Source: Neoechinorhynchus agilis (lineage: Eukaryota > Animalia > Acanthocephala). From it: a DNA stretch of 19,643 bases. The stretch lies in assembly GCA_051530055.1 (NCBI GenBank), contig JBMGUZ010000053.1, positions 1 through 19,643 on the forward strand, written 5' to 3'. The position numbers were made by a program, and so were the translations under genes. The notes beneath the pieces are model-generated. The model did no database searches. It worked only from the letters and a program-made list of their open reading frames with translations, and was not told where the DNA came from. Of the stretch, positions 473-19,643 are shown piece by piece. Within the stretch, counting starts at the first letter, position 1. Every line of letters starts with the position of its first letter.

Positions 473-1408
473 TCAGAGTTCCTCCTGTGACCTTGCCGAT
501 CTTCGTGATGTTAAGATTTGAGTTCTTTGGTCAATGTTTGTGCCGTGGTCCGGATCAAGAACAGGAGGAATCCATTCTGAAGCCAGAAATTTTTCAAATA
601 GTTCGCGAATGGCCGGTTCCCATTCGGAAAATGCGACCGAGTCAGCGCATGAAAAGCAGTAGACCGAACCTTTATATTGATGCCACGATGGAGTTAAAAA
701 AGTTCCGCATTTTGCACAAATCCAAGGCATTGTTGGCTGCGATGTTTTTGGAAGAAAAGCTTGAGGATTGCCGACTGAATCTTGGCGTTCATTTAACATC
801 TCGAGACTGATGACGCCGGCTCGATTATTATCATTTATTCTCGGAAAGATTTGCGGCGGACGACTCTCAGCGATGGCATCGGCATTTTGAATTATGAATT
901 GCATTAAATCTTCAAGTTCTTGGTTGGTATCGCCAATCATTCGATTTGTTTCGGCCGATTTTTGCTCCTTGGACTGCTCGGAAGTTATTCGGAAACACTG
1001 TTGCTGGGCGTTTGCTAAGTTTGCGGCCAATGACAATGCGGACGCTGTAGTGTTCGAGGGTGCCATTCTCAACAAACCGGCAAATGTTCTATCGAGATTT
1101 ACTGGCTGGTTACTTCGAGTTGAATTCATTGAAGGAAATGACACTCCTAAACTCATTTGAAATAATGGAATCGATATTTGGTTTTTGTGGAACTCACCTG
1201 GCGTTGGTTTGCTCGTCGCATTTTGGCTCGCTAGAATCCGCATGGATTCCATTGTAGCCCCCATAATTAAAATGTGGTTTTCAAACCGTTGACTGTCACT
1301 TGTCGGAATATTATCGCTCAATCGTTGAATTAAACGTAAAAGGATTTTGCTTATTTCTGGATTCATGTCTTTATTTGAAAATGTTATCCGTCTCCTTGGG
1401 AAAGACAA
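473..1408 (-). CDS. Protein with C-terminal GATA-like C4 zinc finger (p66/GATAD2-like spacing); may be one exon of a larger gene
   Basis: 311-aa ORF. CAKCGTFLTPSWHQYKGSVYCFSC (nt 647-718) is C-x2-C-x16-C-x2-C with the T-P-x-W core of GATA-type fingers. It is preceded by Q/N/S-rich low-complexity sequence and a helical segment. Confidence 0.6.
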   Translation of the reverse strand: MSFPRRRITFSNKDMNPEISKILLRLIQRLSDNIPTSDSQRFENHILIMGATMESMRILASQNATSKPTPGEFHKNQISIPLFQMSLGVSFPSMNSTRSNQPVNLDRTFAGLLRMAPSNTTASALSLAANLANAQQQCFRITSEQSKEQKSAETNRMIGDTNQELEDLMQFIIQNADAIAESRPPQIFPRINDNNRAGVISLEMLNERQDSVGNPQAFLPKTSQPTMPWICAKCGTFLTPSWHQYKGSVYCFSCADSVAFSEWEPAIRELFEKFLASEWIPPVLDPDHGTNIDQRTQILTSRRSARSQEEL

Positions 1409-3192: not shown

Positions 3193-3325
3193 CTTAAATG
3201 AATGAACAACTAACAGTGTCCAAAGCTTGGGAGATATCAAACTGAAGGATGAGTTTATCGATTCCTAAATGGAGCAAAATGAGAGCCCGAACTCACAGGA
3301 AGGCTCTAAACCGTGAAAGTTAGAT
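3193..3325 (+). repeat. Dispersed repeat; inverted near-identical copy at 19513-19643; possible LTR-retrotransposon gag remnant
   Basis: The reverse complement of the window end matches this stretch apart from a 2-nt indel (gagagcccgaa vs gagagcgaa). The translation EQLTVSKAWEI only weakly recalls the Gypsy gag 'LTLxKAxEI' motif. Confidence 0.8.
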
Positions 3326-3723
3326 GCCAGAAATTTTATGGTTGTTTGCCTTTGCCGAATAAATTTTTTTTATTTGAATTTTTGGTTTAATATTACACCG
3401 AAGTGCGCGGAAAAACGCGAAACTCAAATCCGCTCTCTGTGATCAATGAACAAAAGATGTTTCGAAAATAGCAATTTTTTATCCAATTCTCGTCCGAAAA
3501 ATCCACGAGGGAACATATCTTCAAAGCATTTTAATTTTATCAAGCGATCGAGAGCATTGAATAAAATGCAGGGCCGGTGGATCTCAGTTCCGATTTGTAA
3601 CTTTTAAAGGCAGCAATAGCAGAACACACGAGACGCAGAATTATGATCAACAAATCTATTGAAAAATATCTGTCTATCACTAATAACTAATTCTACGAAG
3701 TATAATCTTAATTCGAATTGCCC

Positions 3724-4964
3724 TCGGATTCGTCGTCTTTTTGCTGATTTTCTCCAGGCTTCGATATGCCTTCGTTCTCTTCTGATGAATCGAAATCATT
3801 AAAATCACCTTGATTTGACGAGCTTTCGTCCATCATTGGAGGTCGACTGCTCATCCCATCGGATTCGTCGTCTTTTTGTTGATTTTCTCCAGGCTTCGAT
3901 ATGCCTTCGTTCTCTTCTGATGAATCGATATCATTAAAATCACCTTGATTTGACGAGCTTTCGTACATCGTTGGAGGTCGACTGCTCATCTCATCGGATT
4001 CGTCGTCATTTTGCTGTTTGTCTCCTGGCTTCGATATGCCTTCGTTCTCTTCTGATGAATCGAAATCATTAAAATCACCTTGATTTGACGAGCTTTCGTC
4101 CATCATTGGAGGTCGACTGCTCATCTCATCGGATTCGTCGTCATTTTGCTGATTTTCTCCAGGCTTCGATATGCCTTCGTTCTCTTCTGATGAATCGAAA
4201 TCATTAAAATCACCTTGATTTGACGAGCTTTCGTCCATCGTTGGAGGTCCGCTGCTCATCTCATCGGATTCGTCATTTTGCAGAATTTCTCCAGGCTTCG
4301 ATATGCCTTCGTTCTCTTCGGATGAATCGAAATCATTAAAATCACCTTGATTTGATGAGCTTTCGTCCATCACTGGAGGTCGACTGCTCATCTCATCGGA
4401 TTCGTCGTCATTTTGCAGATTTTCTCCTGGCTTCGATATGCCTTCGTTCTCTTCTGATGAATCGAAATCATTAAAATCACCTTGATTTGATGAGCTTTCG
4501 TACATCGTTGGAGGTCCGCTGCTCATCTCATCGGATTCGTCGTCTTTTTGTTGATTTTCTCCAGGCTTCGATATGCCTTCGTTCTCTTCTGATGAATCGA
4601 TATCATTAAAATCACCTTGATTTGACGAGCTTTCGCCTATCATTGGAGGTCGACTGCTCATCTCATCGGATTCGTCATTTTGCAGTATTTCTCCGGGCTT
4701 CGATATGCCTTCGTTCTCTTCGGATGAATCGAAATCATTAAAATCACCTTGATTTGACGAGCTTTCGTCCATCACTGGAGGTCGACTGCTCATCTCATCG
4801 GATTCGTCGTCATTTTGCTGATTTTCTCCAGGCTTCGATATGCCTTCGTTCTCTTCTGATGAATCGAAATCATTAAAATCACCTTGATTTGACGAGCTTT
4901 CGTCCATCATTGGAGGTCCACTGCTCATCTCATCGGATTCGTCGTCTTTTTGCTGATTTTCTCC
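3724..4964 (-). repeat. Coding tandem repeat, 135-bp (45-aa) unit, 9 full units plus a partial one
   Basis: Unit GENQQKDDESDEMSSGPPMMDESSSNQGDFNDFDSSEENEGISKP. The only indels are 3 bp (units 3 and 6 are 132 bp), so the frame is kept throughout. Confidence 0.97.
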
Positions 4965-5032
4965 ATCTCTGGATTTAAATAGTATTGGCGAATCGCTATA
5001 ATAGGAGAACGGCGTAATTTTGTTTTTCGTTT

Positions 5033-5252
5033 TAAGATTAATCATTATTGTTTCAATATCACCTAGCGATATTCACTCAGAAAATTGATTTATATTGAAA
5101 ATTTTCGGCCTTTTCGTTGGCCTTCTTCAGTCAGATCTAGAATGTTTGTAAGTTTTTAACATTCTAGATCTGACTGAAGAAGGCCAACGAAAAGGCCGAA
5201 AATTTTCAATATAAATCAATTTTCTGAGTGAATATCGCTAGGTGAAATTGAA
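5033..5252. mobile_element. Palindromic Penelope-derived insertion with 19-bp target-site duplication
   Basis: Inverted arms of 95 bp (5052-5146 / 5158-5252, 1 mismatch, 11-nt loop). Flanked by the direct repeat gtaattttgtttttcgttt at 5014-5032 and 5253-5271. The arm matches the Penelope 3' end at 9288-9326. Confidence 0.85.
5171..5208 (+). ncRNA. Minimal type I hammerhead-ribozyme-like core (mirror copy on the minus strand at 5096-5133)
   Basis: tga-CUGAAGA-a-GGCC-aacgaaaa-GGCC-GAAA-auuu-uca: both conserved core boxes, a 4-bp stem II, a short palindromic stem III and a short stem I. Penelope-like elements are known to carry such minimal hammerheads. Confidence 0.6.
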
Positions 5253-6568
5253 GTAATTTTGTTTTTCGTTTCCGGTCGGACGGAAAGCGCTGATATGTTG
5301 ACTAGTAGTCCTATCGCGATAATCAGTACGATAATGGGAATCCTCATTTTCCTATTTCTTTATTCGATATTCAAGTCGATCTTATAGAATTCGAGGAGAT
5401 CGCAAACCGCTTTTAGGTGAGTGCTCGCCTTTGTTTCCGGTATTTATTCAACATTGACTAGACGCTTGTCGTTCATTTTGTTTATCAATAATGTGTTTCC
5501 CAATATAGAGAACGATTTAGTATCTTTGGTAATTTCACCTTTATTAGCGCTTTGTTTACTTATTTTCCGCCCGCAGTCTTGCGTTCATTGAAGTGATCGA
5601 AGATACTGTAATTAATCTAAACTTCCATTTTGTGCTGTCTAAATTTTTTGTCGTTTGAAATAGTGAAGTTCGCTAGAACAACAAATCTTTTAAAACAAAA
5701 CCCGAAAATAAAATCAACATTTTAACCTATGTCATTTTTTTCAATACTTAGTTTCAGAATAATAATCGGATACAAGAACAGAGAATAAATATGGAGCACA
5801 CGCTGGTGAAAATTCAAAGGGAATTGAATTTCTTTAAATGTCTAAAAAAATTGTTTATCCTAAGCATTTTTTAAAGAAACAATCTCTAAAGAAATGTTAC
5901 TGCTGGGAAATGCTTAGATCAATATTGTATTTTTGAATCGTCCATGTTTATTCTTTTTTAAATGCGCTCTTTTAATCTTTATAAACTCGCAGAAATTGAA
6001 TGCAAATTCCGCGTTACTATGGTAATCAAAGGCAATGAAAAATTCCACAATTGCAAATCATTGAATTCGTTCTACCAAATTTGGGTGCGTTTGTTCTTCA
6101 ATCTTGTAAACTTTGAATTATCTGACTATTCAGCTCTACACAAAATTCATAAACGAGAGCAATAATGATTTATCCAATTGTATCGCTGGAAAGATGTGCC
6201 AACTCGACTTTTTCAATTGGCGGAACGTTGCAACTTCGGATTAGCTGCGCCGGAGAAATTTACAAACGCTAGTAAACAAGGACAATAAAATGGACAATTC
6301 GAAGATCGAAAAAGCGGATGCTGCTGGTGAGGTTAGGAACAATTGCAGCTGCGGCCCTTGAAGAGTGCCTTGTCCTCAACTTCATGTTGTTCAGGGATTG
6401 ATCGAAACGGGCGAATCTGGCCGTTAATTCACTTGGCAGGTGGGGTGTGGAACAACTCTCCGTCCGATTCAATTGCTAAAGACGAGGACGTTCCGACATA
6501 GATTTTTCGTTCCAACCCGAGCTTTCAGAGTTGAGTGGAAGAGCAAAAGTGAGCATTATAAGGATGGA

Positions 6569-6985
6569 CATTGTTTCCATCATTTGTTGACATTTGCAAA
6601 TTTGATGATCTTTCACGTTTATGACTTTTAAAGAATTGAACAAATACGATTAGAGAAAGTAATAACGCTAGCTAGCCATATACAATTTTGTTCGTTTAGT
6701 AATTCCTGACGCGCTAATTCAAAATCTGTTTTCGGATTTGCGATAGCTGCAATAGTTCTTGAGTTATTTGTTTTTCAGTTTTTGGAGAAACAACCGTGAT
6801 TATTGATGCATTGTTTCCATCATTTGTTGACGTTTGCAAATTTGATGATCTTTCACGTTTATGACTTTTAAAGAATTGAACAAATACGATTAGAGAAAGT
6901 AATAACGCTAGCTAGCCATATACAATTTTGTTCGTTTAGTAATTCCTGATGCGCTAATTCAAAATTTGCTTTCGGATTTGCGATA
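6569..6985 (+). repeat. Direct duplication of ~177 bp (6569-6745 and 6809-6985, offset 240) just upstream of the Penelope ORF
   Basis: cattgtttccatcatttgttgac...ttcggatttgcgata occurs twice with a few substitutions. Confidence 0.92.
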
Positions 6986-6996
6986 AACTGCGTCTA

Positions 6997-9345
6997 ATGG
7001 AGAAATTATCGTTGAAAATGGTTCGCAACAAAAATGCATCGGAATTCCTTGAAAGCTGTAAACGGTATGAAGTACTTCCTTCATTTCTGGAACTACAATC
7101 GGTGGCGTATGGGTTCGAGGGCTCAAAAGCCCAGAAGTCGATGCAAACTTGGTTATTGAACAACGCTATTAAGGAACTCCAAAAAGAAAGGAAACATCTT
7201 GAGCGTCAATTAGAGAACAATCGTGGTATTCTGGGTTGCTTGACGGACGACGAATGGTGTAATATCCTGATTGTGGAGGTCGATAACTTGGCAGAAATTC
7301 TCAAACTCGCCGATGGACATCTATTCATTCCGTCGGAGAACAAAGATAAGGTCATCAACCTATCGAAGATTATACTGCCTGAAGAAGTATTGGAACTTTT
7401 GTCATTCGGCCCTGAGTTTATCCCGACCCCGAGAATCGGAACCCTACAATTCAGAACTAAGATGGAGGAAATGGTGTATGACCTTTCGATTCAAATCGAA
7501 AATATCCCATTATGGGAGTTTGAAAGAAGTTGCAAAATGGCTATTAAGAACGGAAGGAATCGTGGTTCGAATATAACAGGAAAGATGTTGACTGGACTCA
7601 AAGTAATCAAGGCACGGAATGAATTACGTAAACTGAAAATCTATAAATTACATGGATTTTGTGTGGCAAACGAAGAAATGTTCAACAGACTTGGTATGGA
7701 ACTTCTACAGGCTGACGAATTCAAGAAGCTCGATTTCTGCCCCACGAATAAACGCGAGAACGAACTCAACAGATTACTTCTGAAATTAATGAAACAGAAG
7801 GGTCTACCAGAAGAAGAGTTTAAAAGAATACGATCCGTGAATGCTAAGACGCCGAAAATGTATTTATTTGCAAAGATCCACAAAACACCCGTCAAAGCGC
7901 GTCCGATCATCGCCGCACACTCATCCTATAACTATAAGTTGTCGAGAAAACTATCCGGATTTATCAAACAGCTCCTTCCGGCATCGGACCATGTGGTCAC
8001 TTCGGGTGTAGATTTCATTGATCGATTGGGCAGGGTGAATCCAAACGAAACCGGTCTCATGGTTTCGGCGGATGTAACGTCCTTATTTACAAAGATACCC
8101 GTGGAGGAGGGGATTGAGCTAGCAACAAACCTATTGGTCGAAAAATGTACAGAATGGAAGCTCTCAGCTAATAATTGGCGCCAGCTTCTTGAATTCTGTA
8201 GACAATATTCAAACATTGAGTTTGAGGGTGTGAATTATGACCAGGCGGATGGGCTAGCGATGTGGGAAACCCATTATACCCACTATTGGCTGAGATATAC
8301 ATCAGAAAATGGGATGAACACTTGTCAGAATTAAATGATGTGAAGCTCTGGCTACGATATGTGGACAATACGTTAATTATTCTGGATCCCAATAGAAGTT
8401 CAACTGTACAACTGAGCAAGGAACTGAATAGCTGCCACCAAAATATAATATGGGCAATGGAAGAGGAGGAAAATGAGTCTCTACCATTGCTGGGGGTTCG
8501 AATAGTGGTTTTATGACATCGGTCTACAGGAAGCAAGGGTTTCCGCACATGGTTGTTCCGTGGATATCTGCTCAGCCGATCAAACACAAATTGGCAATAG
8601 TCCGATCGATGTTCATCAGGGCATTTCGATATTGTTCGGATACAGTACGCCTTAATTGTGAACTATATTGGATTTATTAAACAATCTCAAAGTGAGTGGA
8701 TACCCAAAGAAATACATTGAGAAATGTAGGAGAAGGGCTCAGTATGCTTCGTATGTGAGAACAATCAATCAAGAGAAAAAGAAGTGCTACATTGAAACGC
8801 CATTAGTCGATGTTCAATGGAATTCGGGGATAGATTCGCTGATCAACAGAATCGATAGAGACAAAGCGTGCGCTACGTTTAAGCAAAAGGGCAGGACTCT
8901 CCAAGGAGTACTCCGGCCGAAAAATGAGGAGGTACCGGTCGGATGTGTATACAAGATTTCATGTTCCAATTACAATCTCTCATATGTGGGACAAACCATC
9001 AATTTAAAAAGGATTGCCGAGCACAGAAGAGCAGTGGACAAAAAGACGGATGTAAGTTCGCCAATAGTGTCCCACATCAATAGCAGTGGACATGCGATCA
9101 ATTTTGATGGCACCGAAGTACTGGCCCGCACTGACGTAAAGCGCGATAGAGTGACGATCGAAGCGATAATGATCCAGCGAACAAACACGTTTCCTGGCAA
9201 CAAAGCCGACTATAAATTGAACCTCAGAATACCCCTCGATAAATAGAATTAAGACGCTCTCAAATTTGATTCTACTGTAATTTTAGAGTGACCGAAGAAG
9301 GCCAACGAAAACGCCGAAAATTTTCATATAATAAATTTAATTGAT
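6997..9345 (+). mobile_element. Decayed Penelope-like retroelement (RT plus GIY-YIG endonuclease)
   Basis: PLE N-terminal motif EKLSLK..FLESCK..VLPSFL. RT motifs YLFAKIHK, RPII, SADVTSLFTKIP, GLAM/GNP, RYVDN (catalytic YVDD altered) and TSVYRK. GIY-YIG VYKISC..YVGQT..RIAEH..EAIMI. Frameshifts near 8261, 8505 and 8667. Hammerhead-like 3' end. Confidence 0.93.
9288..9326 (+). ncRNA. Degenerate hammerhead core in the Penelope 3' terminal region
   Basis: gtga-CCGAAGA-a-GGC-caacgaaaac-GCC-GAAA-attttca. It differs from the 5171 copy by 2 nt, including CUGA to CCGA. Confidence 0.5.
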
Positions 9346-9371
9346 ACAATCTTCGCTATTGAAACAAAAAA

Positions 9372-9600
9372 GTTCCAATAATGTTGACGTCACGAAAACT
9401 TAATCCAACTGAAGTGCGATATGCTACTATAGACAAAGAAGCCTTGGCCATCGTGCACGCAATCAAGCGGTTTCATTAATACCTTTATGGGCGACATTTT
9501 GTATTGGAAACTGATTACCAACCGTTAAAACACATATTCGGGTACCAGAGGGACCTCAGCAAGATGACCAACGGAAGGATAGTGCTTTGGGTCGATATAA
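9372..9600 (+). mobile_element. Ty3/Gypsy LTR-retrotransposon RNase H fragment (pseudogene)
   Basis: Frame from 9372 reads [56 protein letters not shown], the characteristic Ty3/Gypsy RNase HI sequence, with one in-frame stop. Confidence 0.9.
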
Positions 9601-9737
9601 GATACGTTAAAATAAAAACCATGACAACCACTGTCTGCGCGATACACCAAGCAAGCCCTAAAATGTACGTGGTGCGAAACTTGACCATTCCAATGATTTA
9701 ACTAATTACGGTCATAATGGAGAAAATTTTGAGTAAA

Positions 9738-10906
9738 TGTGGCTACGACTACTTTCGGATGCCTGACGTGCAACAGAAGGAAGTTTGTGTTTATGAATAG
9801 TAATGATGTACATGACTTAGACAATTCAATGTTTCGCGCTTAAAAATTCTGTTCTTTGTGTGGCAACGACAACTTTGGGATTCCTGACGTGCAACAGAAG
9901 GAAGTTTGTGTTTATGAATAGCAATGAGGTACATGACATAGACGATTCAATGATTGGCGCTTAAAAATTCTGTTATTTGTGTGGCAACGACCATATTGGG
10001 ATTCCTGACGTGCAACAGAAGGAAGTTTGTGTTTATGAATAGCAATGAGGAACATGATATAGACAATTCAATGATTGGCGCTTAAAAATTCTGTTATTTG
10101 TGTGGCAACGACTTCTTTGGGATTCCTGACGTACAACAGAAGGAAGTTTGTGTTTATGAATAGCAATGAGGTACATGACTTAGACAATTCAATGATTGGT
10201 GCTTAAAAATTCTGCTATTTGTGTGGCAACGACTTCTTTGGGATGCCTGACGTACAACAGAAGGAAGTTTGTGTTTATGAATAGCAATGAGGTACATGAC
10301 TTAGACGATTCAATGATTGGTGCTTAAAAATTCTGTTATTTGTGTGGCTACGACTTCTTTCGGATTCCTGACGTGCAACAGAAGGAAGTTTGTGTTTATG
10401 AATAGCAATGAGGTGCATGATTTAGACGATTCAATGATTGGTGCTAAAAAATTCTGTTATTTGTGTGGCAACGACCACCTTGGGATTCCTGACGTGCAAC
10501 AGAAGGAAGTTTGTGTTTATGAATAGCAATGAGGAAAATGATATAGACAATTCAATGATTGGCGCTTAAAAATTCTGTTATTTCTGTGGCAACGACTACT
10601 TTGGGGTTCCTGACGATCAACAGAAGGAAGTTTGTGTTTATGAATAGCAATGAGGAACATGATATAGACAATTCAATGATTGGTACTTAAAAATTCTGTT
10701 ATTTGTGTGGCAACGACCACCTTGGGATTCCTGACGTGCAACAGAAGGAAGTTTGTGTTTATGAATAGCAATGAGGAAAATGATATAGACAATTCAATGA
10801 TTGGCGCTTAAAAATTCTGTTATTTCTGTGGCAACGACTTCTTTGGGATGCCTGAAGTACAACAGAAGGAAGTTTCTGTTTATGAATAGCAATGAGGTAC
10901 ATGACT
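9738..10906. repeat. 121-bp satellite/tandem array, left block (~9.7 units)
   Basis: The marker 'gaagttt' recurs at 9780, 9901, 10022 ... 10869, an exact 121-bp period. Units differ by scattered substitutions. Confidence 0.97.
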
Positions 10907-13900
10907 AGTCCAATTGATCTCGGCACTGCTTTCCTGGCCTATATAAGTAGAGCTAAAGCCACTCTTGGCGATATGGAGCATGTTCGAGTGGAAAAGAAGG
11001 AAAGACGCGAAAAGTACCGCAATTTCAGTACTTTTGTTCCTACCGACAAAAATGGATCATTCACCCGCGACATGGAGGCTGCCATGCGAAACTTCAAGTA
11101 TGAAGCTGCTTTCGTTGGGCCCACAACCATAGCGGAAAAATCTGATAGTATAGACCATAAGATTCGTAACGATGTTCGAGTGCGTGCTCATTATCTTCTT
11201 AATAAGATTGGCACCTCGAAGAAACGACTTATGGGTCTTTGTTTCTCCCATAGAAATAATCCACCTATGTTGCACGCCTTGGCACATGGGCTTAACTCCC
11301 GTAATCAGCGTTTGTGCGCTGCGTTCTGTAAGGAGTTGGACACGTTGAATGGCCAGGGCGAGTTAATAGAAAATCTCGAATGGCGCGCCACTAGGCGCAC
11401 TACACTTCTCTCTTCGCTTAGAAATAGGCACTTTCGGCAGTTCAGTACTTCGGGATGGCTCTCGCCAGATGCTATCTCCACTCTAGCTGGAAACGGTGTG
11501 AGCAGTTTCACAAGCTCTTACATCTCCTCCGTTCTAGCTGGTGGTGATGGCTATGCCGAGAGGCTCTCTGAAGAATGGAACCGCCTTATGCATTCCATTA
11601 ACGGCAATCCAGTCTCGCGACCCTATGTGCCGGTAGGGTATCAGATGACCGTTAAGTCTTTACAATCAGCTGACCACGTTTTTAAGATCGTTACTGCCTT
11701 GGCTGGGAATTACTCCCTTTTCCGAACTCTTCCAAACACTACGCTCGGTTTCCTCCACGAAGTGGGTCTCACAGCCAAAGATAATGACATCTTTCTTGGC
11801 GAAAAAGCTAGAGCAGCGGCCCAGATCAATTGTCCTTTCTATAGGGGGGAGAGTGTTGAAGAGAAGAAGGCTTTACACTATTACTTCGGTGTTATGCCCC
11901 ATATGGTTGAAAGCTATGGGCCGATTTGTCTTTCTCTAGGCCTTTCTTATTCTACTTCCGGTTTAATCGGTGCTGAGTACAATGAGTTGTGGCGCGAGAC
12001 TGAAGGTGAAGCGGTTGTAGTCCAACCCTCAGAGAGTGTGAGCTTCGGTCGCTCGGCTTTACCCGAGGAGACTTTAACTCCGCAAGATCAACTCTCTATC
12101 ATTACTCGTGTCTTTGGGGCCTCCCCGGCCGATCTTATACGTAGCACCAATCCAACGCGAGTCCGGGCCAAGTTTCGCGTAACTGTTGAAAAAATCTTGG
12201 CTCAGAAAAGAATCGAATTCAAGGAACTCCTCTCCCAAAATCAGAAGCAAGTTGAGTCCACTCGAGAATCTCTAGCCAAGCGTCCCCGCGATTCTGTGTT
12301 GCTCAAAATTCTTGAAGAATCTAGACAAGCCCAGCTTAGAATTGATTCTAGTCTGGCTTTGATAGAGCGGATTGGGGAGGAATTTCAAGCGCTATCTCAT
12401 CTCGACGACCTGCCGATCATGACGGCTTATAATGATGATCTAGATCTAGAATCTTTGCCGAATAGTCCGGTCGACATCGGTACTGCCTTCTTAGCCTACA
12501 TGAGTAGAGCAAAAGCCACTATCGGCGAGACTGAGCACGTCCGAGTAGAGAAGCGGGAGAAGCGCGATAGGTATCGTAATTACAATTCATTCGTCCCTAC
12601 AGATAAGAACGGTTCTTTCACCCGTGACATGGAGGCTGCCGTACGAAACCTCAAGTATGAGGCTGCGTTCGTCGGGGCTACAACCATCGCGGAAAAGTCG
12701 GACAATATCGAACATAAGATTCGTAATGATGTGCGAGTTCGCGCGCATTACCTTCTTAATAAAATCGGAACATCAAAGAAGAGATTAATGGGTCTCTGCT
12801 TTGCTCATAGGAACAATCAGCCCATGTTACATGCTCTAGCGCATGGGCTGGCCTCCCGTAACCAGCGCTTGTGCGCAGCCTTTTGTAGGGAGTTAGATGT
12901 TCTAAATGGGCAAAGCGAATTGTTGGAAAGTCTGGAATGGCGCGCCACTAGGCGCACAGCTTTGCTTGCATCGCTTAGAAATAGGCACTTCAGGCAATTC
13001 AGTTCTTCGGGGTGGCTTTCACCTGATGCCATCTCCACTTTAGCCGGAAACGGGGTGAGCAGTTTCACTAGCTCCTATATCTCCTCCGTCCTGGCTGGTG
13101 GCGATGGTTATGCTGAAAGACTTTCCGAGGAATGGAATCGCCTCATGCACTCTCTCAAAGGCAATTCGATTCCGCGACCCTATGTGCCGGTAGGATATCA
13201 AATGACAGTTGAATTCGTTCAGTCGGCCGACCATGTCTCCAAAATAGTTACCGCTCTGGCTGGTAATTATTCCTTGTTTCGGACCATCCCCGCCACCAAC
13301 TTTAGCATCATTGCTACCAAAGAGCCCGAATTTCTCCATGACGCAGGCCTGATCCTCGAGCAGGACGATAGCTTTCTTAACGATAAAGCCAGGGCAGTTG
13401 CTGAGGCTAGCGTACCCTTCTACAGAGGCAAGAGCGTCGAGGAAAAGAGAGCTCTACATTACTATCTCTGCAACATGCCCCATCTGACTGAAACTCACGG
13501 ACCGATTTGTATCTCTTTGGGCTTATCTTATGCTATGTCTGGTCCAATTGGTGCCGAATATAACGAACTATGGCGTGAGCAAGAGCTCATGTTGAAACCC
13601 GGCATGGACCTAGACCCTAATGTGTTCCACATTCTCTCACCCGATCCGGTTGACCCTCCGACCACTATTTCGAGCAGCTCTTGTCTCGATAGAGTGTATA
13701 GCTTAATTCTATCAGATGATTTGGATACATCCGCACGGATGGATTTCACTCGGCTTTTACATACCGTTAGTCAGGTTGCCCCACTGCTCCGTCGTCGGAA
13801 CGAAAAAATGGCTTACCTGACGCTTTGCGGTTCTGCTGCGCTCGATCATTATCGAGACGGCTCCCCAGCCACGTTCGCTCGAATGCGAGCAATTCTTTCT

Positions 13901-15523
13901 ACTGACAATTATCCGACAGTTACGGCTCCGCCGCCAAACGGTAATTCTCGCTTGGATGGTAATATTCGCCGTATGTGGGTATGTCAACCGTTTGAGATCG
14001 TCTGGCTGCGCATGTCCGTCGTTGACTTCTTCAGATGCGTAGCCGTTAACAATTTAGTCTGGAACGAAGGACCAAATGTCCACAACTCGGCACTTGACGG
14101 TCGTACCCTCGCCGTCATGGAACAATATTTCCCGGCTCCCGCGGAGCAGTTGCATCGTATAGTCGCTACTGTGTGGAATCCGATTCTTGTTGATGAGATC
14201 TATATGAATCGTTCTGGCACCGAGGAGCATTTCTTTTCTCTGATGGATGCGTTCGCTAAACAAGCCAATAAGATTTTTATTGTGGTAACCGTCACGTTAG
14301 AAGAGATTGCGACTTGTGTCCAGCGATTCCGCTATACTAGTTCCAACGGAATGGGTTCTTTCCCTTACGACAATCTCGGCCTCTCGATCCTCAACGGTTC
14401 GTTTCCGAATGAGGCTTTAAATGAAATTCCATGTCAAGAGGAATTATTATCTTACTTAGCCTTATCCAACAATACTCTTGACTACCAATTTATGGGTAGG
14501 CTAAAGGTTCCGTACAATTCTGGTATTAGACTAGCCTGGAATTACGACCCGGGCTTCTACTTTTACCCTCTTATTCAGTTTGGCCTTCTTAAGGTCTCAG
14601 ATCTTCCGGCTACTCGAACAAGGTTGACTCCTGAAAACGAGTTGAAGTATTATTCTGCACCTGACATCTTGCCGTGCCTTAGGCTTGCTGCACACAAGTT
14701 AAGTCTGCGGCTTGACACGATGCAAGTTTCGATCAAAGCAGTGACGCCTGAATCTTCTTGGATTTTAGGGTCGATTTCCGATGTGCTACCAACGAGCGAT
14801 AGGACTATTTTGGGTATCATTAACGCATATTTGGGCGTTCCGCTAGCTAGAGCTTTTGCTGCATGGGCGGTTGATCCGGAAGTCACTATCGTTCATGAAC
14901 GAACAATTCTACACTGGGTCATGGTCTCCAAGTCACTTGGAGTATCGTTCGGTTCCGGGGCCATGGCGTATTCCGAACATAATGGTAGGTCTTCTGTTGG
15001 AGTGTCGTGGCAACTGTCTTCTCATACTCAGGAGGCTGAGCTGACGACTAAATTCTTCTTAAACAATTCGGTATGGTCTGTCGTTTGTACCGACGACCTT
15101 GATCCTTTCAGAATCGGACTTAATGAACCTTGCACGCCCGAACTAATGCCTCTCGTCACATTGAAAGGTTTCATCGGCGGAATCCGTTCTGATATCACTT
15201 TCAGAGGGGCGCTCCTTCCTAGAGGATGCAAAGGTCAGTACGACGTGATTACTATAGGTTCTCTCTTCGCGATCCAAGTTAAAATTAACGCTCATATCCG
15301 TCTCCGCTTCTCTCTGGCGCATCTAGCGAGTTGGGACACTCGCTTTGACAAGGGCACCTTCGATGTCCCCAGGAACGAAAGGTATACCGATCCTCTCGGT
15401 ATTGCCTCGTGTTTCGAGGGGGACTCGCAGTTAGCACCCATGGGCCCCGAGGCCCGAATTTCTTCCAAAGGGTCGAAGATAGAGGATGCTTCAGAGCGTG
15501 CGGCTGCCTCTGCGGAGGATTAG
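10892..15523 (+). CDS. Viral ORF1: putative capsid/structural polyprotein with an internally duplicated ~365-aa domain; 5'-truncated, start codon from the satellite
   Basis: 1543 aa without a stop, upstream of the RdRp as in totivirus genomes. Repeat copies at 10907-11998 and 12464-13579. The capsid assignment rests on position only; no motif was recognised. Confidence 0.7.
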   Translation: MRYMTSPIDLGTAFLAYISRAKATLGDMEHVRVEKKERREKYRNFSTFVPTDKNGSFTRDMEAAMRNFKYEAAFVGPTTIAEKSDSIDHKIRNDVRVRAHYLLNKIGTSKKRLMGLCFSHRNNPPMLHALAHGLNSRNQRLCAAFCKELDTLNGQGELIENLEWRATRRTTLLSSLRNRHFRQFSTSGWLSPDAISTLAGNGVSSFTSSYISSVLAGGDGYAERLSEEWNRLMHSINGNPVSRPYVPVGYQMTVKSLQSADHVFKIVTALAGNYSLFRTLPNTTLGFLHEVGLTAKDNDIFLGEKARAAAQINCPFYRGESVEEKKALHYYFGVMPHMVESYGPICLSLGLSYSTSGLIGAEYNELWRETEGEAVVVQPSESVSFGRSALPEETLTPQDQLSIITRVFGASPADLIRSTNPTRVRAKFRVTVEKILAQKRIEFKELLSQNQKQVESTRESLAKRPRDSVLLKILEESRQAQLRIDSSLALIERIGEEFQALSHLDDLPIMTAYNDDLDLESLPNSPVDIGTAFLAYMSRAKATIGETEHVRVEKREKRDRYRNYNSFVPTDKNGSFTRDMEAAVRNLKYEAAFVGATTIAEKSDNIEHKIRNDVRVRAHYLLNKIGTSKKRLMGLCFAHRNNQPMLHALAHGLASRNQRLCAAFCRELDVLNGQSELLESLEWRATRRTALLASLRNRHFRQFSSSGWLSPDAISTLAGNGVSSFTSSYISSVLAGGDGYAERLSEEWNRLMHSLKGNSIPRPYVPVGYQMTVEFVQSADHVSKIVTALAGNYSLFRTIPATNFSIIATKEPEFLHDAGLILEQDDSFLNDKARAVAEASVPFYRGKSVEEKRALHYYLCNMPHLTETHGPICISLGLSYAMSGPIGAEYNELWREQELMLKPGMDLDPNVFHILSPDPVDPPTTISSSSCLDRVYSLILSDDLDTSARMDFTRLLHTVSQVAPLLRRRNEKMAYLTLCGSAALDHYRDGSPATFARMRAILSTDNYPTVTAPPPNGNSRLDGNIRRMWVCQPFEIVWLRMSVVDFFRCVAVNNLVWNEGPNVHNSALDGRTLAVMEQYFPAPAEQLHRIVATVWNPILVDEIYMNRSGTEEHFFSLMDAFAKQANKIFIVVTVTLEEIATCVQRFRYTSSNGMGSFPYDNLGLSILNGSFPNEALNEIPCQEELLSYLALSNNTLDYQFMGRLKVPYNSGIRLAWNYDPGFYFYPLIQFGLLKVSDLPATRTRLTPENELKYYSAPDILPCLRLAAHKLSLRLDTMQVSIKAVTPESSWILGSISDVLPTSDRTILGIINAYLGVPLARAFAAWAVDPEVTIVHERTILHWVMVSKSLGVSFGSGAMAYSEHNGRSSVGVSWQLSSHTQEAELTTKFFLNNSVWSVVCTDDLDPFRIGLNEPCTPELMPLVTLKGFIGGIRSDITFRGALLPRGCKGQYDVITIGSLFAIQVKINAHIRLRFSLAHLASWDTRFDKGTFDVPRNERYTDPLGIASCFEGDSQLAPMGPEARISSKGSKIEDASERAAASAED

Positions 15524-15559
15524 CCACCGAACGATTTAGTTCGGAATGTGAATCTGAGC

Positions 15560-16365
15560 TGATGCATCTGGTACACCTTCAGCTCTGAATAACCTGTGCT
15601 GGCATGTGGAATGCCCGGTCTGCAACATGATTTCGATTAGACATGAGAGACAAGATATTGTCATCGAGTTGGGTAGAGATTACTCTGAATCTAAAGTCGA
15701 AATCGATAGTTGGATGCACATCATTGCTGGAAATCGGCCAAATCCGCCCATTTTAAGGTTGCTCCTCAATATACGCTCCTTACTGCATTTGACATTTTCA
15801 GAATGGCCCGCCCGACACTTAAAGTCGCCAATGAGTTCGTCCCATCAACTTTCGAGCTCTACAACTTGTTACATGGTTTGCATACTGCTGTCGTTGGAAA
15901 TACGAAAATTCAACATTATTTCAAAGGAACTTGGTAACCAACTCGCAGGTAAGCTTAGTCATTACTATAACCCGCGCCCTGTGAGAGTGTTTGCCAAAGC
16001 TCGACAGAAGAGACTTGCTAAACGGTGGGACTTCGTCCCGATCTACTCTGGTGATATTCCACGGAATATACTTTCGAAAATTGAAAATTATCTAAAAGTA
16101 TGGAACTTGTCAGCAACTATTAGGCAGTTGTATTCTTTTCTTCTTCCATACTATCAATCCAACCAGTTCGAATACTCCGACGTCTGGTTACTTGATGCAT
16201 CTGGTACACCTTCAGCTCTGAATAACCTGTGCTGGCATGTGGAATGCCCGGTCTGCAACATGATTTCGATTAGACATGAGAGACAAGATATTGTCATCGA
16301 GTTGGGTAGAGATTACTCTGAATCTAAAGTCGAAATCGATAGTTGGATGCACATCATTGCTGGAA
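15560..16365 (+). repeat. Perfect 173-bp non-tandem duplication (15560-15732 = 16193-16365)
   Basis: tgatgcatctggtacacc...catcattgctggaa is identical at both sites, offset 633 nt. Visible in the protein as ECPVCNMISIRHERQDIVIELGRDYSESKVEIDSWMHIIAG twice. Confidence 0.97.
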
Positions 16366-18548
16366 GGAAGTTATCTACACGCGAATTCTTTTCGCTACTT
16401 CGCCCGCTTGCAACAGAGACCGAAACAGAGGGGATGCTAAGGGCAGCATGGGTTGAGAGGGAGGCTGATTGTTCAATCCGCTACATTCCCCCTACCTCTG
16501 CTATGTCTGAAAAGGTTGGATCTCTTTTTCCTGGGTCCCCTGCTTGGCAGCGCTCGTGCGCTTTGGTGAGCCGATTAGGACTCGATTTCTTATTGCAGCA
16601 TATCTATCAGTCTTTGACTTTGGTTCCCACCTTCGAGGGTTCGTTGTTGTGGATGCGCCGAGTTTCTGCCCTTGCCAAGGCTAATATAACTTCCACCCGT
16701 TACGCCACCATGCTGGTCGACCTGAATAGATGGCTTGGCCATTTTCCGCTTCTTAGCGAAAAAGAGATGATTGACTCAGCGCGAGGATGGTTGGGGTGTA
16801 CGAATTCATGCTTAGGTACGGGCGGTGCACTGATCTGGGAAAGGCTTAATCTCTTGCATGCGTCGGAACTTATCTCAAAGATCTTCTCATCCATTCCAAG
16901 GACAACCGGAGCTGATATATGGCGCGAGATGCTCATTAGTCGCACTTGGTCTACGCCCGGAGCATCGAACGCTGGAGATTTCTCAGCTAGGAAGAATCAG
17001 CTAGGTTTTAAGCTCCCGAAGACCAAAGCTTCCCTAGCGCTTTGGGCTTCGGACGACCAAATCTACAATATGATATCCACTCCATCCAGGGAGGTGATGA
17101 ATGTGGCCCCGAAATATGACGAACTGGGTAAGGCGCGACATATCCTACGTTCAGATGACGCTACCTATCTTAAGCAGGTGTTAGTTGAAAAATGTCTCGG
17201 AACTCCTTCCCCTGCCGTGTTAGATGGTATTCGGGTTGTCTCGCCCATCTTCTCTACGCCCCACGAGTGGCTTCAACAATTACGCGAATTCGGGGAGGCG
17301 GCTGCCAAACCGTGGTACTTCTCGATCCAATTGGACCACTCGAAATTTGACGAGCATCAGTCTGGTCCTCTAATCAGATGTATCATGTTGGAGCTGTTAC
17401 ATCATGCCTCTAAACGTCATTCTTGGATTTTGAGTCCTCTTAGGACTTCTTTGCTTACTTCCTTCCTTATGCCGGCGGATGTAAAGTTAGCGGCTGGCGG
17501 CTTCATCTGCTCCCATTTGGGGGGACTTCCTTCCGGGTGGAAGTGGACGGCTTTACTTGACACCATTCTCAACTATTCGTTGAATAGAGCAGCGATGGAA
17601 GTCGTCGGTCTTCTGCCGGAACCGAATATCATGGCTCATATGGGGGACGATTCTCTATGGTTTGTCAAAGAGGACGAGTTGAGAATGGCAGTGCACGTCC
17701 CATCCTTCTTAAACTGGAAAGGTTATGTTCTCAATGCGTCGAAAAATTATATCTCTAACATGTCGTGTGACTTCCTCGGCTATACGGCAGTGAGCGCCAC
17801 TGACATACGGGGTGCCGCTTCGCGAATGGTACCTACTGTAGTGGTCTCACATTCTCGGCTGGGCTATGAAATTCCACCCATCTTACGTTCCTTTTCGGCA
17901 CTGTGGAATTGGGTGATGCTGGTCAAAAGGCTAGAGGGCGTGGTCCCGAAGTCCACTCTATTGCCCCTTATTGCAAAGGATGTTTCCGGTATATCTAAGA
18001 ATTCTTATCTTCAAGTTCTCACTTATCTAAATACTCCTGCTTCTCTCGGCGGCGCCGGTTTAACCGGAATAGCATCGTATCTTGATTATGATGGCACGAA
18101 TAAAGCGGTTACTCTACTTAAGCGCCCACCAGAACGAGAAGAAGTTGTCGTTACTAAAACAACGCCTCTGTCTCTCTGCCTCCCTCGTGACTGCAGAGCT
18201 ACGTTCGATTGGGCGGTCAATTCTTATTGCAAGCGCACCCTTCCGAGTTATATTGGCAATGAGCTGTATTTTCAGAAGGTCGAGCGAATCGTTATAAAAC
18301 GGAACAAATTTTTGTCGATAACCTGTTTGATCCCCGCTCGTTGGGAGTTTTCGCTTCCGAGGGTTATCGAATCCACTTACAAGGAATTAGTTACCCGGTC
18401 CAGATCTGAATTTCGTCTCTTCCTGGCACGTCATCCTACTGCCCTTTCGGTTAGGACGAAGTTTCTATTCTCTCTCTTTTCTCGTAGAGGCCATTCTTGG
18501 GCCATTATTCGCTCGTGGTTGCTTGGGCGTTTTGCCCACTGTTCGTAA
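15606..18548 (+). CDS. RdRp: Toti-like RNA-dependent RNA polymerase (probably begins near 15349 in the reconstructed virus)
   Basis: Motifs in order: WSTPGAS; F (PKYDELGKARHIL); A (LDHSKFDEHQ, ~17334); B (GLPSGWKWTALLDTILN, ~17523); C (MGDDS, GDD at 17643-17651); D (GYVLNASKN); E (CDFLG). Confidence 0.95.
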   Translation: MECPVCNMISIRHERQDIVIELGRDYSESKVEIDSWMHIIAGNRPNPPILRLLLNIRSLLHLTFSEWPARHLKSPMSSSHQLSSSTTCYMVCILLSLEIRKFNIISKELGNQLAGKLSHYYNPRPVRVFAKARQKRLAKRWDFVPIYSGDIPRNILSKIENYLKVWNLSATIRQLYSFLLPYYQSNQFEYSDVWLLDASGTPSALNNLCWHVECPVCNMISIRHERQDIVIELGRDYSESKVEIDSWMHIIAGRKLSTREFFSLLRPLATETETEGMLRAAWVEREADCSIRYIPPTSAMSEKVGSLFPGSPAWQRSCALVSRLGLDFLLQHIYQSLTLVPTFEGSLLWMRRVSALAKANITSTRYATMLVDLNRWLGHFPLLSEKEMIDSARGWLGCTNSCLGTGGALIWERLNLLHASELISKIFSSIPRTTGADIWREMLISRTWSTPGASNAGDFSARKNQLGFKLPKTKASLALWASDDQIYNMISTPSREVMNVAPKYDELGKARHILRSDDATYLKQVLVEKCLGTPSPAVLDGIRVVSPIFSTPHEWLQQLREFGEAAAKPWYFSIQLDHSKFDEHQSGPLIRCIMLELLHHASKRHSWILSPLRTSLLTSFLMPADVKLAAGGFICSHLGGLPSGWKWTALLDTILNYSLNRAAMEVVGLLPEPNIMAHMGDDSLWFVKEDELRMAVHVPSFLNWKGYVLNASKNYISNMSCDFLGYTAVSATDIRGAASRMVPTVVVSHSRLGYEIPPILRSFSALWNWVMLVKRLEGVVPKSTLLPLIAKDVSGISKNSYLQVLTYLNTPASLGGAGLTGIASYLDYDGTNKAVTLLKRPPEREEVVVTKTTPLSLCLPRDCRATFDWAVNSYCKRTLPSYIGNELYFQKVERIVIKRNKFLSITCLIPARWEFSLPRVIESTYKELVTRSRSEFRLFLARHPTALSVRTKFLFSLFSRRGHSWAIIRSWLLGRFAHCS

Positions 18549-18783
18549 ATTTCTTTTTCAAGGTGACGAACTAGATCTTATTAATCCATACGTATCCAAT
18601 GTTGATTTAGCATTTTCTTTCTTTTACGAATACAAATTGACTGTACCTAAACTTACTTTAATACTTGAATCTCAACCTTTACGCAAATTTCGACGTTACG
18701 ATGTCAATGATATTATGAATTTGGGCGGTACTCAAGGCCTATTTACGGAATCCGACTCCCTTTCCATGTTCTGCGATAAGTAG
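18523..18783 (+). pseudogene. Probable frameshifted C-terminal continuation of the RdRp (or a small ORF3)
   Basis: The +1 frame is open from 18391 to 18783, overlapping the RdRp end. Removing one base in tgg ttg [c] ttg ggc gtt gives ...SWLLGVLPTVRKFLFQG... Confidence 0.45.
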
Positions 18784-18865
18784 ATCGATGGGCGGGACTT
18801 CCGGATGTTTGGTGAGCAATTCGGCTCACTTACGTATATGTTAACCAGTCTGTTGGTGTGCGGGC

Positions 18866-19091
18866 TAAAAATTCTGTTATTTCTGTGGCAACGACTTCTT
18901 TGGGATGCCTGAAGTACAACAGAAGGAAGTTTCTGTTTATGAATAGCAATGAGGTACATGACTTAGACAATTCAATGATTGGTGCTTAAAAATTCTGCTA
19001 TTTGTGTGGCAACGACTTCTTTGGGATGCCTGAAGTACAACAGAAGGAAGTTTCTGTTTATGAATAGCAATGAGGTACATGACATAGACGA
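18866..19091. repeat. 121-bp satellite, right block (~1.9 units)
   Basis: Same unit and orientation as the left block. 18866-18963 is identical to 10809-10906. Confidence 0.96.
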
Positions 19092-19512: not shown

Positions 19513-19643
19513 ATCTAACTTTCACGGTTTAGAGCCTTCCTGTGAGTTCGCTCTCATTTTGCTCCATTTAGGAATCGATAAACTCATCCTTCAGTTTGAT
19601 ATCTCCCAAGCTTTGGACACTGTTAGTTGTTCATTCATTTAAG
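19513..19643 (-). repeat. Inverted copy of the dispersed repeat at 3193-3325 (runs off the window)
   Basis: Direct sequence match on the reverse strand. Confidence 0.85.

What the first reader, a model, noticed from the sequence alone, without database searches (positions are those of the whole stretch)
10907..18865. Near-complete, almost undecayed toti-like dsRNA virus genome integrated in a host satellite array
Seen: 7,959 bp with a stop-free 1543-aa ORF1 and a 980-aa RdRp retaining motifs A-F. The GLPSGWKWTALLDT motif B is of the Giardiavirus/Artivirus/Pistolvirus type. Known: these viruses have no DNA stage or integrase, and most totivirus EVEs are short capsid or RdRp fragments. Inference: a recent capture by a host RT of a probably undescribed virus, giving almost its whole genome and direct evidence of its host range.
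Basis: partly seen in the sequence, partly recalled or inferred. Interest (0 to 1): 0.92.

Follow-up and report, generated by a model that had tools for sequence, protein, structure and literature searches.

The report
Mosaic toti-like virus fossil in acanthocephalan
The window is an unplaced contig of the fish-parasitic thorny-headed worm Neoechinorhynchus agilis, in which an 8-kb DNA copy of a previously undescribed toti-like double-stranded-RNA virus sits inside a satellite repeat; it is a real, young, unusually long viral fossil, but a rearranged patchwork rather than an intact genome.

Summary
Window 10907-18865 is virus-derived DNA with two long open frames, and it interrupts one unit of a 121-nt satellite array. 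ORF2 is a viral RNA-dependent RNA polymerase with all palm motifs kept. Its nearest sequence and structure neighbours are toti-like viruses (Schistocephalus solidus toti-like virus 3, Dumyat virus), at only 30-33% identity.

The window is a whole 19,643-bp contig of Neoechinorhynchus agilis (Acanthocephala). That 46-Mb genome holds at least ten related loci.

"Near-complete, almost undecayed" is overstated.
- The 1543-aa ORF1 is a 5'-truncated ORF1 fused in frame to a ~1.1-kb piece of a second virus lineage.
- The polymerase gene carries one ~370-nt insertion and one frameshift.
- The 980-aa ORF therefore starts in foreign sequence and ends early.

Copies differ almost only at synonymous sites (pS 0.74-0.81, pN 0.08-0.30). 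They are therefore separate captures of diverged viruses, not decayed DNA duplicates.

There is no poly(A) and no target duplication; about 22 nt of satellite is lost. This fits end-joining of a template-switched cDNA.

Verdict: a new member of a known kind (non-retroviral EVE) in a new host phylum. Interest is moderate.

The parts
9738..10905 (.). Left part of the 121-nt satellite array (9.7 units) that the insert interrupts
   Evidence: TRF, period 121, 92% matches. The unit next to the junction carries the same variant bases as the right-flank units.
10907..18865 (+). Whole virus-derived insert (7,959 bp): mosaic endogenous toti-like element
   Evidence: Bounded by satellite on both sides, GC 0.47-0.50. 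No poly(A), no target-site duplication, about 22 nt of satellite unit missing, 1-4 nt of microhomology.
10892..15523 (+). ORF1 (1543 aa), presumed capsid-type gene. Broken gene given as one part: one 5' truncation and one in-frame fusion to a ~1.1-kb piece of a second virus lineage. No stops or frameshifts.
   Evidence: Relatives are 1266-1290 aa. No Pfam, PDB or IMG/VR relative. The start ATG lies in the satellite.
15606..18783 (+). RNA-dependent RNA polymerase gene. Broken gene given as one part: one ~370-nt insertion (173 nt of it an exact copy of ORF2 sequence, the rest of unknown origin) and one frameshift. No internal stops.
   Evidence: Relatives. AlphaFold model pLDDT 79.5, pTM 0.84. 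The top 50 BFVD neighbours shown are unnamed entries or toti-like/dsRNA-virus RdRps.
17313..17852 (+). Polymerase palm domain (Pfam RdRP_1 / RdRP_4 match, ORF2 residues 570-749)
   Evidence: Motifs A-E with GDD are conserved against P0001 and P0003-P0007. 57 of 60 relatives hit RdRP_4.
18784..18865 (+). 3' untranslated tail of the viral sequence, with no poly(A)
   Evidence: Read directly. The polymerase alignment of relatives ends within about 20 residues of their C-termini.
18866..19089 (.). Right part of the same 121-nt satellite array (1.9 units)
   Evidence: Its phase resumes about 22 nt after the point where the left flank stops.
5171..9326 (+). Neighbour: remnant of a Penelope-like retroelement. 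It has an RT-like ORF 6997-8334 and a GIY-YIG-like ORF 8668-9246, bracketed by a 38-nt direct repeat.
   Evidence: GIY-YIG scores E 8.6e-4, below the Pfam cut-off, and no RVT hit was found. The RT assignment is my reading of motifs and is an inference.
3708..5045 (-). Neighbour: host ORF of nine 135-nt coding repeats with an SH3BGR-type domain
   Evidence: The same gene lies next to the other versions of the locus.
19513..19643 (.). Contig end: inverted copy of 3193-3325 (a repeat; assembly caution)
   Evidence: I2 100% and I3 95% complementary.

Best explanation
This is a non-retroviral endogenous viral element. It is DNA copied from the RNA of toti-like (Ghabrivirales) viruses of the acanthocephalan Neoechinorhynchus agilis, inserted into one unit of a 121-nt satellite.

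Shown:
- The insert is viral and sits in host DNA.
- It is a mosaic. It contains a ~1.1-kb ORF1 fragment of one virus lineage, a 5'-truncated ORF1 of a second lineage, a short exact repeat of polymerase sequence, ~198 nt of unknown origin, and then a whole polymerase gene with its 3' tail.
- The copies in this genome diverged as working coding sequences.

Inferred:
- A cellular reverse transcriptase copied viral plus-strand RNA and switched templates several times, including between two co-infecting related viruses.
- The chimeric cDNA was then joined into a double-strand break by end-joining. This would explain the microhomology, the ~22-nt target loss, and the absence of poly(A) and target duplication.
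- Later DNA-level duplication, deletion and recombination produced the other versions of the locus.

In its present state it cannot act as a virus. It is most likely a neutral, or at most small-RNA-producing, record of infection.
For: Viral identity:
- Pfam RdRP_1 and RdRP_4 above cut-off.
- 340 relatives. [quoted passage not shown]
- All palm motifs are kept.
- Confident model. Among its top 50 BFVD neighbours shown, every named entry except one labelled only 'Riboviria sp.' is an RdRp of a toti-like or related dsRNA virus; about 20 entries carry no name.

Host:
- The annotated 2578-aa protein KAL7667470.1 lies on a contig of exactly 19,643 bp and starts at window 10892.
- The flanks hold host ORFs.
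- A 99.65-100% identical shorter copy lies beside an mRNA-capping-enzyme gene on contig JBMGUZ010000012.1.
- More distant copies sit on chromosome scaffolds beside host genes.

True insertion:
- Both flanks belong to one array in near-continuous phase with shared variant bases.

Mosaic structure.

Divergence as coding sequence:
- Differences by codon position are 59/32/198 for the two ORF1 copies in the window.
- All comparisons give pS 0.74-0.81 and pN 0.08-0.30, with no internal stops.

Youth: foreign GC.
Against: - No read-level evidence. The contig is a small unplaced piece of a hybrid Nanopore/Illumina assembly of about 50 pooled worms (PMC12690905).
- Its end is an inverted copy of an internal stretch.
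- The locus exists in at least three versions with different large indels. Parts of the mosaic could therefore be assembly mixing of paralogues or haplotypes.
- The reverse-transcriptase step and the end-joining step are inferred from junction anatomy only.
- The neighbouring Penelope-like element and the satellite are absent from the other EVE loci examined, apart from a 70-nt fragment in L006 and a 65%-identical 745-nt stretch in L007. No particular retroelement can therefore be blamed.
- ORF1 could not be shown to be a capsid.
- No exogenous counterpart was found.
Confidence: 0.85

Rival explanations
1. Single clean capture: one recent reverse-transcription event copied almost the whole genome of one virus, which has hardly changed since.
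For: Two long open frames, an intact 3' tail, polymerase motifs kept, foreign GC.
Against: - Two ORF1 stretches only 74% identical in DNA, with saturated synonymous differences, lie in one frame.
- The 5' end is missing.
- There is one insertion with an exact internal repeat and unexplained filler.
- There is one frameshift.
Confidence: 0.05
2. Assembly chimera or non-chromosomal DNA: the viral part was joined to host repeats by the assembler, or derives from extrachromosomal viral cDNA in infected worms rather than from the germline.
For: Small unplaced contig, pooled DNA, hybrid assembly. The contig end is an inverted repeat and contig 12 has inverted duplicate ends. Mosaic virus/repeat DNA is what episomal viral DNA looks like in insects (my knowledge of that literature, not tested here).
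Against: - A two-sided mis-join would not restore the same satellite array within about 22 nt of phase and with the same unit variants.
- The same insert/satellite association was assembled independently in two other contigs.
- dsRNA is not sequenced in DNA libraries.
- Related copies lie inside 7.8-19.4-Mb chromosome scaffolds.
Confidence: 0.06
3. Domesticated host genes: the ORF1-like and polymerase-like frames are kept open because the worm uses them (for example a capsid-derived protein, or a polymerase for RNA silencing), and the family expanded by gene duplication under purifying selection.
For: Long open frames at many loci. pN is far below pS in every comparison. The annotators called gene models on them. 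Co-opted toti-like EVEs exist in planthoppers (PMC10636211).
Against: - In this copy the polymerase is interrupted by one insertion and one frameshift, and ORF1 is a truncated fusion.
- Only this copy has a whole polymerase gene; the others are fragments.
- Synonymous sites are saturated between copies whose non-coding flanks are 93-99% identical. This fits divergence in viruses before capture better than old host paralogues.
- GC is still foreign.
Confidence: 0.08

Closest known systems
Toti-like endogenous viral elements of arthropods (for example planthopper ToEVEs, PMC10636211; sea-louse toti-like EVEs, PMC10287012)
   Same: DNA copies of toti-like virus genes in an animal genome. They are multi-copy, some cover both the ORF1/capsid and RdRp regions, and some have long intact frames. 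They are often found on unplaced scaffolds and in repeat-rich DNA.
   Different: - The host phylum is Acanthocephala (Syndermata), not an arthropod.
- The polymerase lineage is only 30-33% identical to any named virus.
- This copy holds a whole polymerase gene and most of ORF1 in one 8-kb block, and joins two virus lineages in one frame.
- No expression or small-RNA data are available here.
Schistocephalus solidus toti-like virus 3 (exogenous, two-ORF, ~7.95 kb, vertically transmitted in a tapeworm; PMC7305300)
   Same: It is among the three best full-length polymerase hits, about 30-32% identical, and is the named one for which a paper was read. It has a similar genome size and an ORF1-then-RdRp layout, and it infects a fish-parasitic worm.
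   Different: That virus is an RNA virus absent from its host's genome. The present element is DNA, truncated and rearranged. ORF1 homology between the two was not tested.
Mononegavirales-like RdRp EVEs of the acanthocephalan Pomphorhynchus laevis (PMC12548735)
   Same: RNA-virus polymerase fossils in an acanthocephalan genome, on unplaced contigs, annotated as hypothetical proteins.
   Different: A different virus realm branch (negative-strand versus dsRNA toti-like). They are fragmentary and about 60% identical to one another. That paper knew only one acanthocephalan assembly.
Retroelement-mediated processed insertions (LINE target-primed reverse transcription)
   Same: An RNA must have been reverse-transcribed by a cellular enzyme.
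   Different: There is no poly(A) tail and no target-site duplication. Instead a small target deletion and microhomology are seen.

Membership tests
Non-retroviral endogenous viral element (EVE) | Sequence derived from genes of an RNA virus that has no DNA stage | tested here: met
   RdRP_1/RdRP_4 above cut-off, toti-like relatives, structural neighbours.
Non-retroviral endogenous viral element (EVE) | Flanked on both sides by host chromosomal DNA | tested here: met
   One satellite array on both sides, and host ORFs in the flank. A sister copy lies beside the capping-enzyme gene. This is shown at assembly level only.
Non-retroviral endogenous viral element (EVE) | Junctions confirmed by single DNA molecules; germline inheritance | not testable with these tools
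   No reads were available. The DNA came from a pool of about 50 worms.
Toti-like viruses (order Ghabrivirales) | Polymerase of the RdRP_4 type with palm motifs A-C, and nearest relatives toti-like | tested here: met
   57 of 60 relatives; rank 1 E 3.6e-46, TM 0.79; Dumyat virus, Shuangao toti-like virus.
Toti-like viruses (order Ghabrivirales) | Single segment with ORF1 upstream of the polymerase ORF | tested here: met
   Order and strand in the window. In the relative L001 the ORF1 stop is followed 59 nt later by the polymerase ATG.
Toti-like viruses (order Ghabrivirales) | ORF1 product is a capsid protein of the totivirus fold | tested here: inconclusive
   No Pfam hit, no PDB sequence hit, no IMG/VR relative. 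The AlphaFold model was unusable, pLDDT 31.
Toti-like viruses (order Ghabrivirales) | dsRNA genome in virions; an exogenous form exists | not testable with these tools
   No close relative outside the N. agilis genome was found in the protein collections.
   Piscine myocarditis virus ranks 6, infectious myonecrosis virus 18 and 26, Giardia lamblia virus 28-29, all at 14-17% identity. Unassigned invertebrate toti-like viruses rank higher. No reference phylogeny was made.
LINE-type target-primed retroposition | 3' poly(A) and target-site duplication | tested here: not met
   no A-run, no duplication, about 22 nt of target lost.
Penelope-like retroelement (neighbour at 5171-9326) | Reverse transcriptase plus GIY-YIG endonuclease | tested here: inconclusive
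   GIY-YIG scores E 8.6e-4, below the cut-off. There is no RVT Pfam hit. RT-like motifs were read by eye.

The most novel reading that the evidence does not exclude
The N. agilis genome keeps repeat-rich loci where cDNAs of different RNA viruses pile up in one orientation. The window fuses two toti-like lineages. A third toti-like copy lies about 8 kb upstream on contig 12. On chromosome CM121341.1 a toti-like ORF1 copy lies about 750 bp from a nodavirus-like replicase copy on the same strand. This would be a piRNA-cluster-like archive of infections in Syndermata, fed by a diverse toti-like virus clade that still circulates. The locus would be structurally polymorphic among worms.
Probability: 0.25. 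Interest if true: 0.7.

Novelty: new member of a known kind. Interest (0 to 1): 0.5.

Why it matters
- No toti-like virus or toti-like EVE of an acanthocephalan turned up in the literature I could search. The genome paper does not mention viruses.
- The element gives a whole polymerase gene and most of ORF1 of a lineage only 30-33% identical to any named virus. It links that lineage to tapeworm and other invertebrate toti-like viruses.
- At least three lineages about 25% apart in DNA were captured in one neighbourhood of a 46-Mb genome, all still open. This implies frequent and recent endogenization, and probably living viruses worth looking for in these fish parasites.
- The insert also offers clean junctions for studying how RNA-virus cDNA enters animal DNA without retroelement hallmarks.

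Tried and rejected
- The word-indexed protein search with the whole ORF2 found nothing, although relatives exist. That was a prefilter miss, not absence.
- PDB sequence searches with single proteins gave no hits. With the ORF1 profile only noise came back. With the polymerase profile only generic picorna/calicivirus palm hits came back. Foldseek against the PDB gave only generic viral RdRps.
- AlphaFold of ORF1 with 7 sequences gave pLDDT 31, so no fold search was run on it.
- ORF1 profile against IMG/VR: none.
- Rfam: no family at gathering score. Only sub-threshold hairpin matches at 5066-5237.
- Searching papers by accession returned noise.
- Hypothesis that the two ORF1 copies arose by duplication after insertion: rejected by the codon-position pattern.
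- Hypothesis that the neighbouring Penelope-like element or the satellite is regularly linked to these EVEs: not supported. L002 and L008 lack both. L006 has only a 70-nt fragment and L007 a 65%-identical stretch.
- Origin of the ~198-nt filler: no match in the window, in relatives' 5' regions or in their flanks. It recurs at 100% in two other versions of the locus.
- An apparent match of the polymerase to the SH3BGR repeat was a bookkeeping artefact: two loci shared one file. One search resolved it.


Full report
**1. What is in the window.**
- Two long + strand frames exist as the finding says: 10892..15523 (1543 aa) and 15606..18548 (980 aa, GTG start).
- A 121-nt satellite runs 9738-10905 and resumes at 18866-19089.
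- GC rises from 0.32-0.43 in the flanks to 0.47-0.50 between them.
- ORF2 passes the Pfam cut-offs for RdRP_1 (5e-8) and RdRP_4 (8e-6). ORF1 hits nothing.
- With about 5% of random codons being stops, frames of this length are not chance.

**2. Source.**
- The protein collection holds a 2578-aa 'hypothetical protein, partial' of Neoechinorhynchus agilis (KAL7667470.1) on a contig of exactly 19,643 bp, and it begins at window 10892.
- The window is therefore a whole unplaced contig of assembly GCA_051530055.1 (project JBMGUZ).
- That assembly is a hybrid Nanopore/HiFi/Illumina assembly of a 46-Mb genome, made from a pool of about 50 worms (PMC12690905).
- The paper does not mention viruses.
- The annotators' gene model runs ORF1 and ORF2 together. 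That is a gene-caller's product, not evidence of function.

**3. The polymerase is toti-like.**
- An exhaustive HMMER search with the polymerase part gave 340 relatives.
- The best full-length relatives are 30-33% identical. [quoted passage not shown]
- 57 of 60 relatives hit Pfam RdRP_4.
- Motifs F, A, B, C (GDD), D and E are all conserved in the window's copy.
- An AlphaFold model built on 60 relatives is confident (pLDDT 79.5, pTM 0.84).
- Among the top 50 BFVD neighbours shown, about 30 are named; all but one of those (labelled only 'Riboviria sp.') are RdRps of toti-like or related dsRNA viruses, and about 20 are unnamed. Rank 1 has E 3.6e-46 and TM 0.79. Next come Dumyat virus and Shuangao toti-like virus. 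Piscine myocarditis virus ranks 6, infectious myonecrosis virus 18, and Giardia lamblia virus 28.
- Solved structures give only generic viral RdRps.
The narrower genus-level label stays unresolved.

**4. It is not an 'almost undecayed' genome.**
- Inside ORF1, a stretch of about 370 codons occurs twice at 79% amino-acid identity.
- The differences between the two copies fall 59/32/198 on codon positions 1/2/3 (pN 0.11, pS 0.79, saturated). They diverged as working genes, not by decay after insertion. One copy is a fragment of a second virus lineage fused in frame.
- Related copies have ORF1 of 1266-1290 aa. Measured against them, the main lineage here lacks its 5' UTR and roughly its first 100 codons.
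- The ATG of the listed ORF lies in the satellite.
- The polymerase gene carries one ~370-nt insertion relative to the closest relative. Of this, 173 nt exactly repeat a stretch of ORF2, and about 198 nt match nothing I could find.
- The polymerase gene also carries one frameshift, after which the relatives' alignment continues in another frame to within about 20 residues of their ends.
- Tally for ORF1: one truncation and one fusion, with no stops or frameshifts.
- Tally for the polymerase: one insertion and one frameshift, with no internal stops.
- About 110 codons of the '980-aa RdRp' are not native polymerase sequence.

**5. It is a true insertion.**
- The unit broken by the insert and the units on the right flank share variant bases that most left-hand units lack.
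- The array resumes about 22 nt further on in phase.
- There is 1-4 nt of ambiguous microhomology at each edge, no poly(A) and no target duplication.
- A two-sided mis-join would not produce this pattern.

**6. The family in this genome.**
- ORF1-like proteins occur at nine or more places and polymerase-like proteins at seven or more. All are annotated as hypothetical proteins of N. agilis. Their identity to the window ranges from 99% down to 33-40%.
- Some lie on 7.8-19.4-Mb chromosome scaffolds beside host genes.
- Every pairwise comparison I made (window, L001 and L002; ORF1 and polymerase parts) gave pS 0.74-0.81 and pN 0.08-0.30, with no internal stops.
- By contrast, the non-coding flanks of the clustered copies are 93-99% identical.
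- The simplest reading is repeated capture of diverged viruses. DNA duplication followed by decay, or an old host gene family, fits less well.
- Only the window's copy has a whole polymerase gene.

**7. Other versions of the same locus.**
- Contig JBMGUZ010000012.1 carries the same flank, Penelope-like element and satellite, and a 99.65-100% identical copy.
- That copy joins the satellite at a different point, lacks the second-lineage fragment, and ends soon after ORF1. It still shares the window's internal rearrangement exactly.
- A third toti-like lineage (76% DNA identity) lies about 8 kb upstream of it.
- Contig JBMGUZ010000051.1 carries the second-lineage fragment at 100% identity with its own deletions, and the same unexplained ~198-nt filler.
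- Because the DNA was pooled, these may be haplotypes, paralogues or assembly variants. I cannot tell which.

**8. Mechanism.**
- Shown: viral sequence in host DNA, mosaic composition, and the junction anatomy described above.
- Inferred: reverse transcription of viral plus strands by a cellular enzyme with template switches, including between two co-infecting relatives. The cDNA was then joined into a break in the satellite, and DNA-level rearrangement followed.
- The LINE-type route is not supported.
- The neighbouring Penelope-like remnant cannot be implicated. The other loci examined lack it and the satellite, apart from a 70-nt fragment in L006 and a 65%-identical 745-nt stretch in L007.
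- ORF1's role as a capsid rests on its position only. Every test was empty or failed.

**9. Comparison and verdict.**
- Toti-like EVEs, including ones spanning both genes and ones with intact frames, are known in arthropods (PMC10636211; PMC10287012).
- In acanthocephalans, only mononegavirus-like polymerase EVEs of Pomphorhynchus laevis turned up in my search (PMC12548735).
- This is therefore a new member of a known kind. It is notable for its length, its youth, its new host phylum, its divergent lineage and the fusion of two lineages.
- It is less pristine than the finding claims.
- No close relative outside this genome was found, so a living virus remains to be shown.

Noticed in passing
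L006 (CM121341.1:9672315-9686672), 8788-12539: A nodavirus-like replicase copy lies about 750 bp downstream of a toti-like ORF1 copy (6001-8358), on the same strand. It has Noda_Vmethyltr at 2.6e-48 and RdRP_3 at 3.5e-7, in two adjacent ORFs. So EVEs of two unrelated RNA viruses lie side by side on a chromosome.
   Followed up: partly
window 3708-5045 (-): A 445-aa acidic ORF built from nine 135-nt coding tandem repeats with an SH3BGR-type domain (3.5e-14). The repeat number differs in the other versions of the locus.
   Followed up: partly
window 5040-5264 and 5171-5208 / 9289-9326: A 107-nt near-perfect hairpin (94% complementary, 11-nt loop), and a 38-nt direct repeat that brackets the ~4.1-kb Penelope-like remnant. 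Rfam gives only sub-threshold miRNA-hairpin matches and no hammerhead.
   Followed up: partly
window 19513-19643 versus 3193-3325; contig JBMGUZ010000012.1 ends (L001 versus L003): The contig end is an exact inverted copy of an internal stretch. The 59-kb sister contig has inverted duplicate ends, each carrying the same EVE copy. This is either a real palindrome or a long-read assembly artefact.
   Followed up: no
window, within 15606-16200; also L004 about 13325-13521 and L005 11397-11593: A ~198-nt stretch of unknown origin inside the insert recurs at 100% identity in two other versions of the locus, next to different neighbours. It has no other match.
   Followed up: partly
window 473-1408 (-): A 311-aa ORF with a C-x2-C-x17-C-x2-C (GATA-like) zinc-finger pattern and no Pfam hit.
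   Followed up: no
L004 15669-17921: A host mRNA-capping-enzyme gene (DSPc, mRNA_cap_enzyme, mRNA_cap_C) lies 2 kb from the truncated sister copy. This is useful as a unique anchor for read mapping.
   Followed up: no
tool behaviour, versus 25: The word-indexed protein search returned no hit for the whole ORF2, although 64-83% identical proteins are cluster representatives in the same collection. Negative results of that tool should be read with care.
   Followed up: yes
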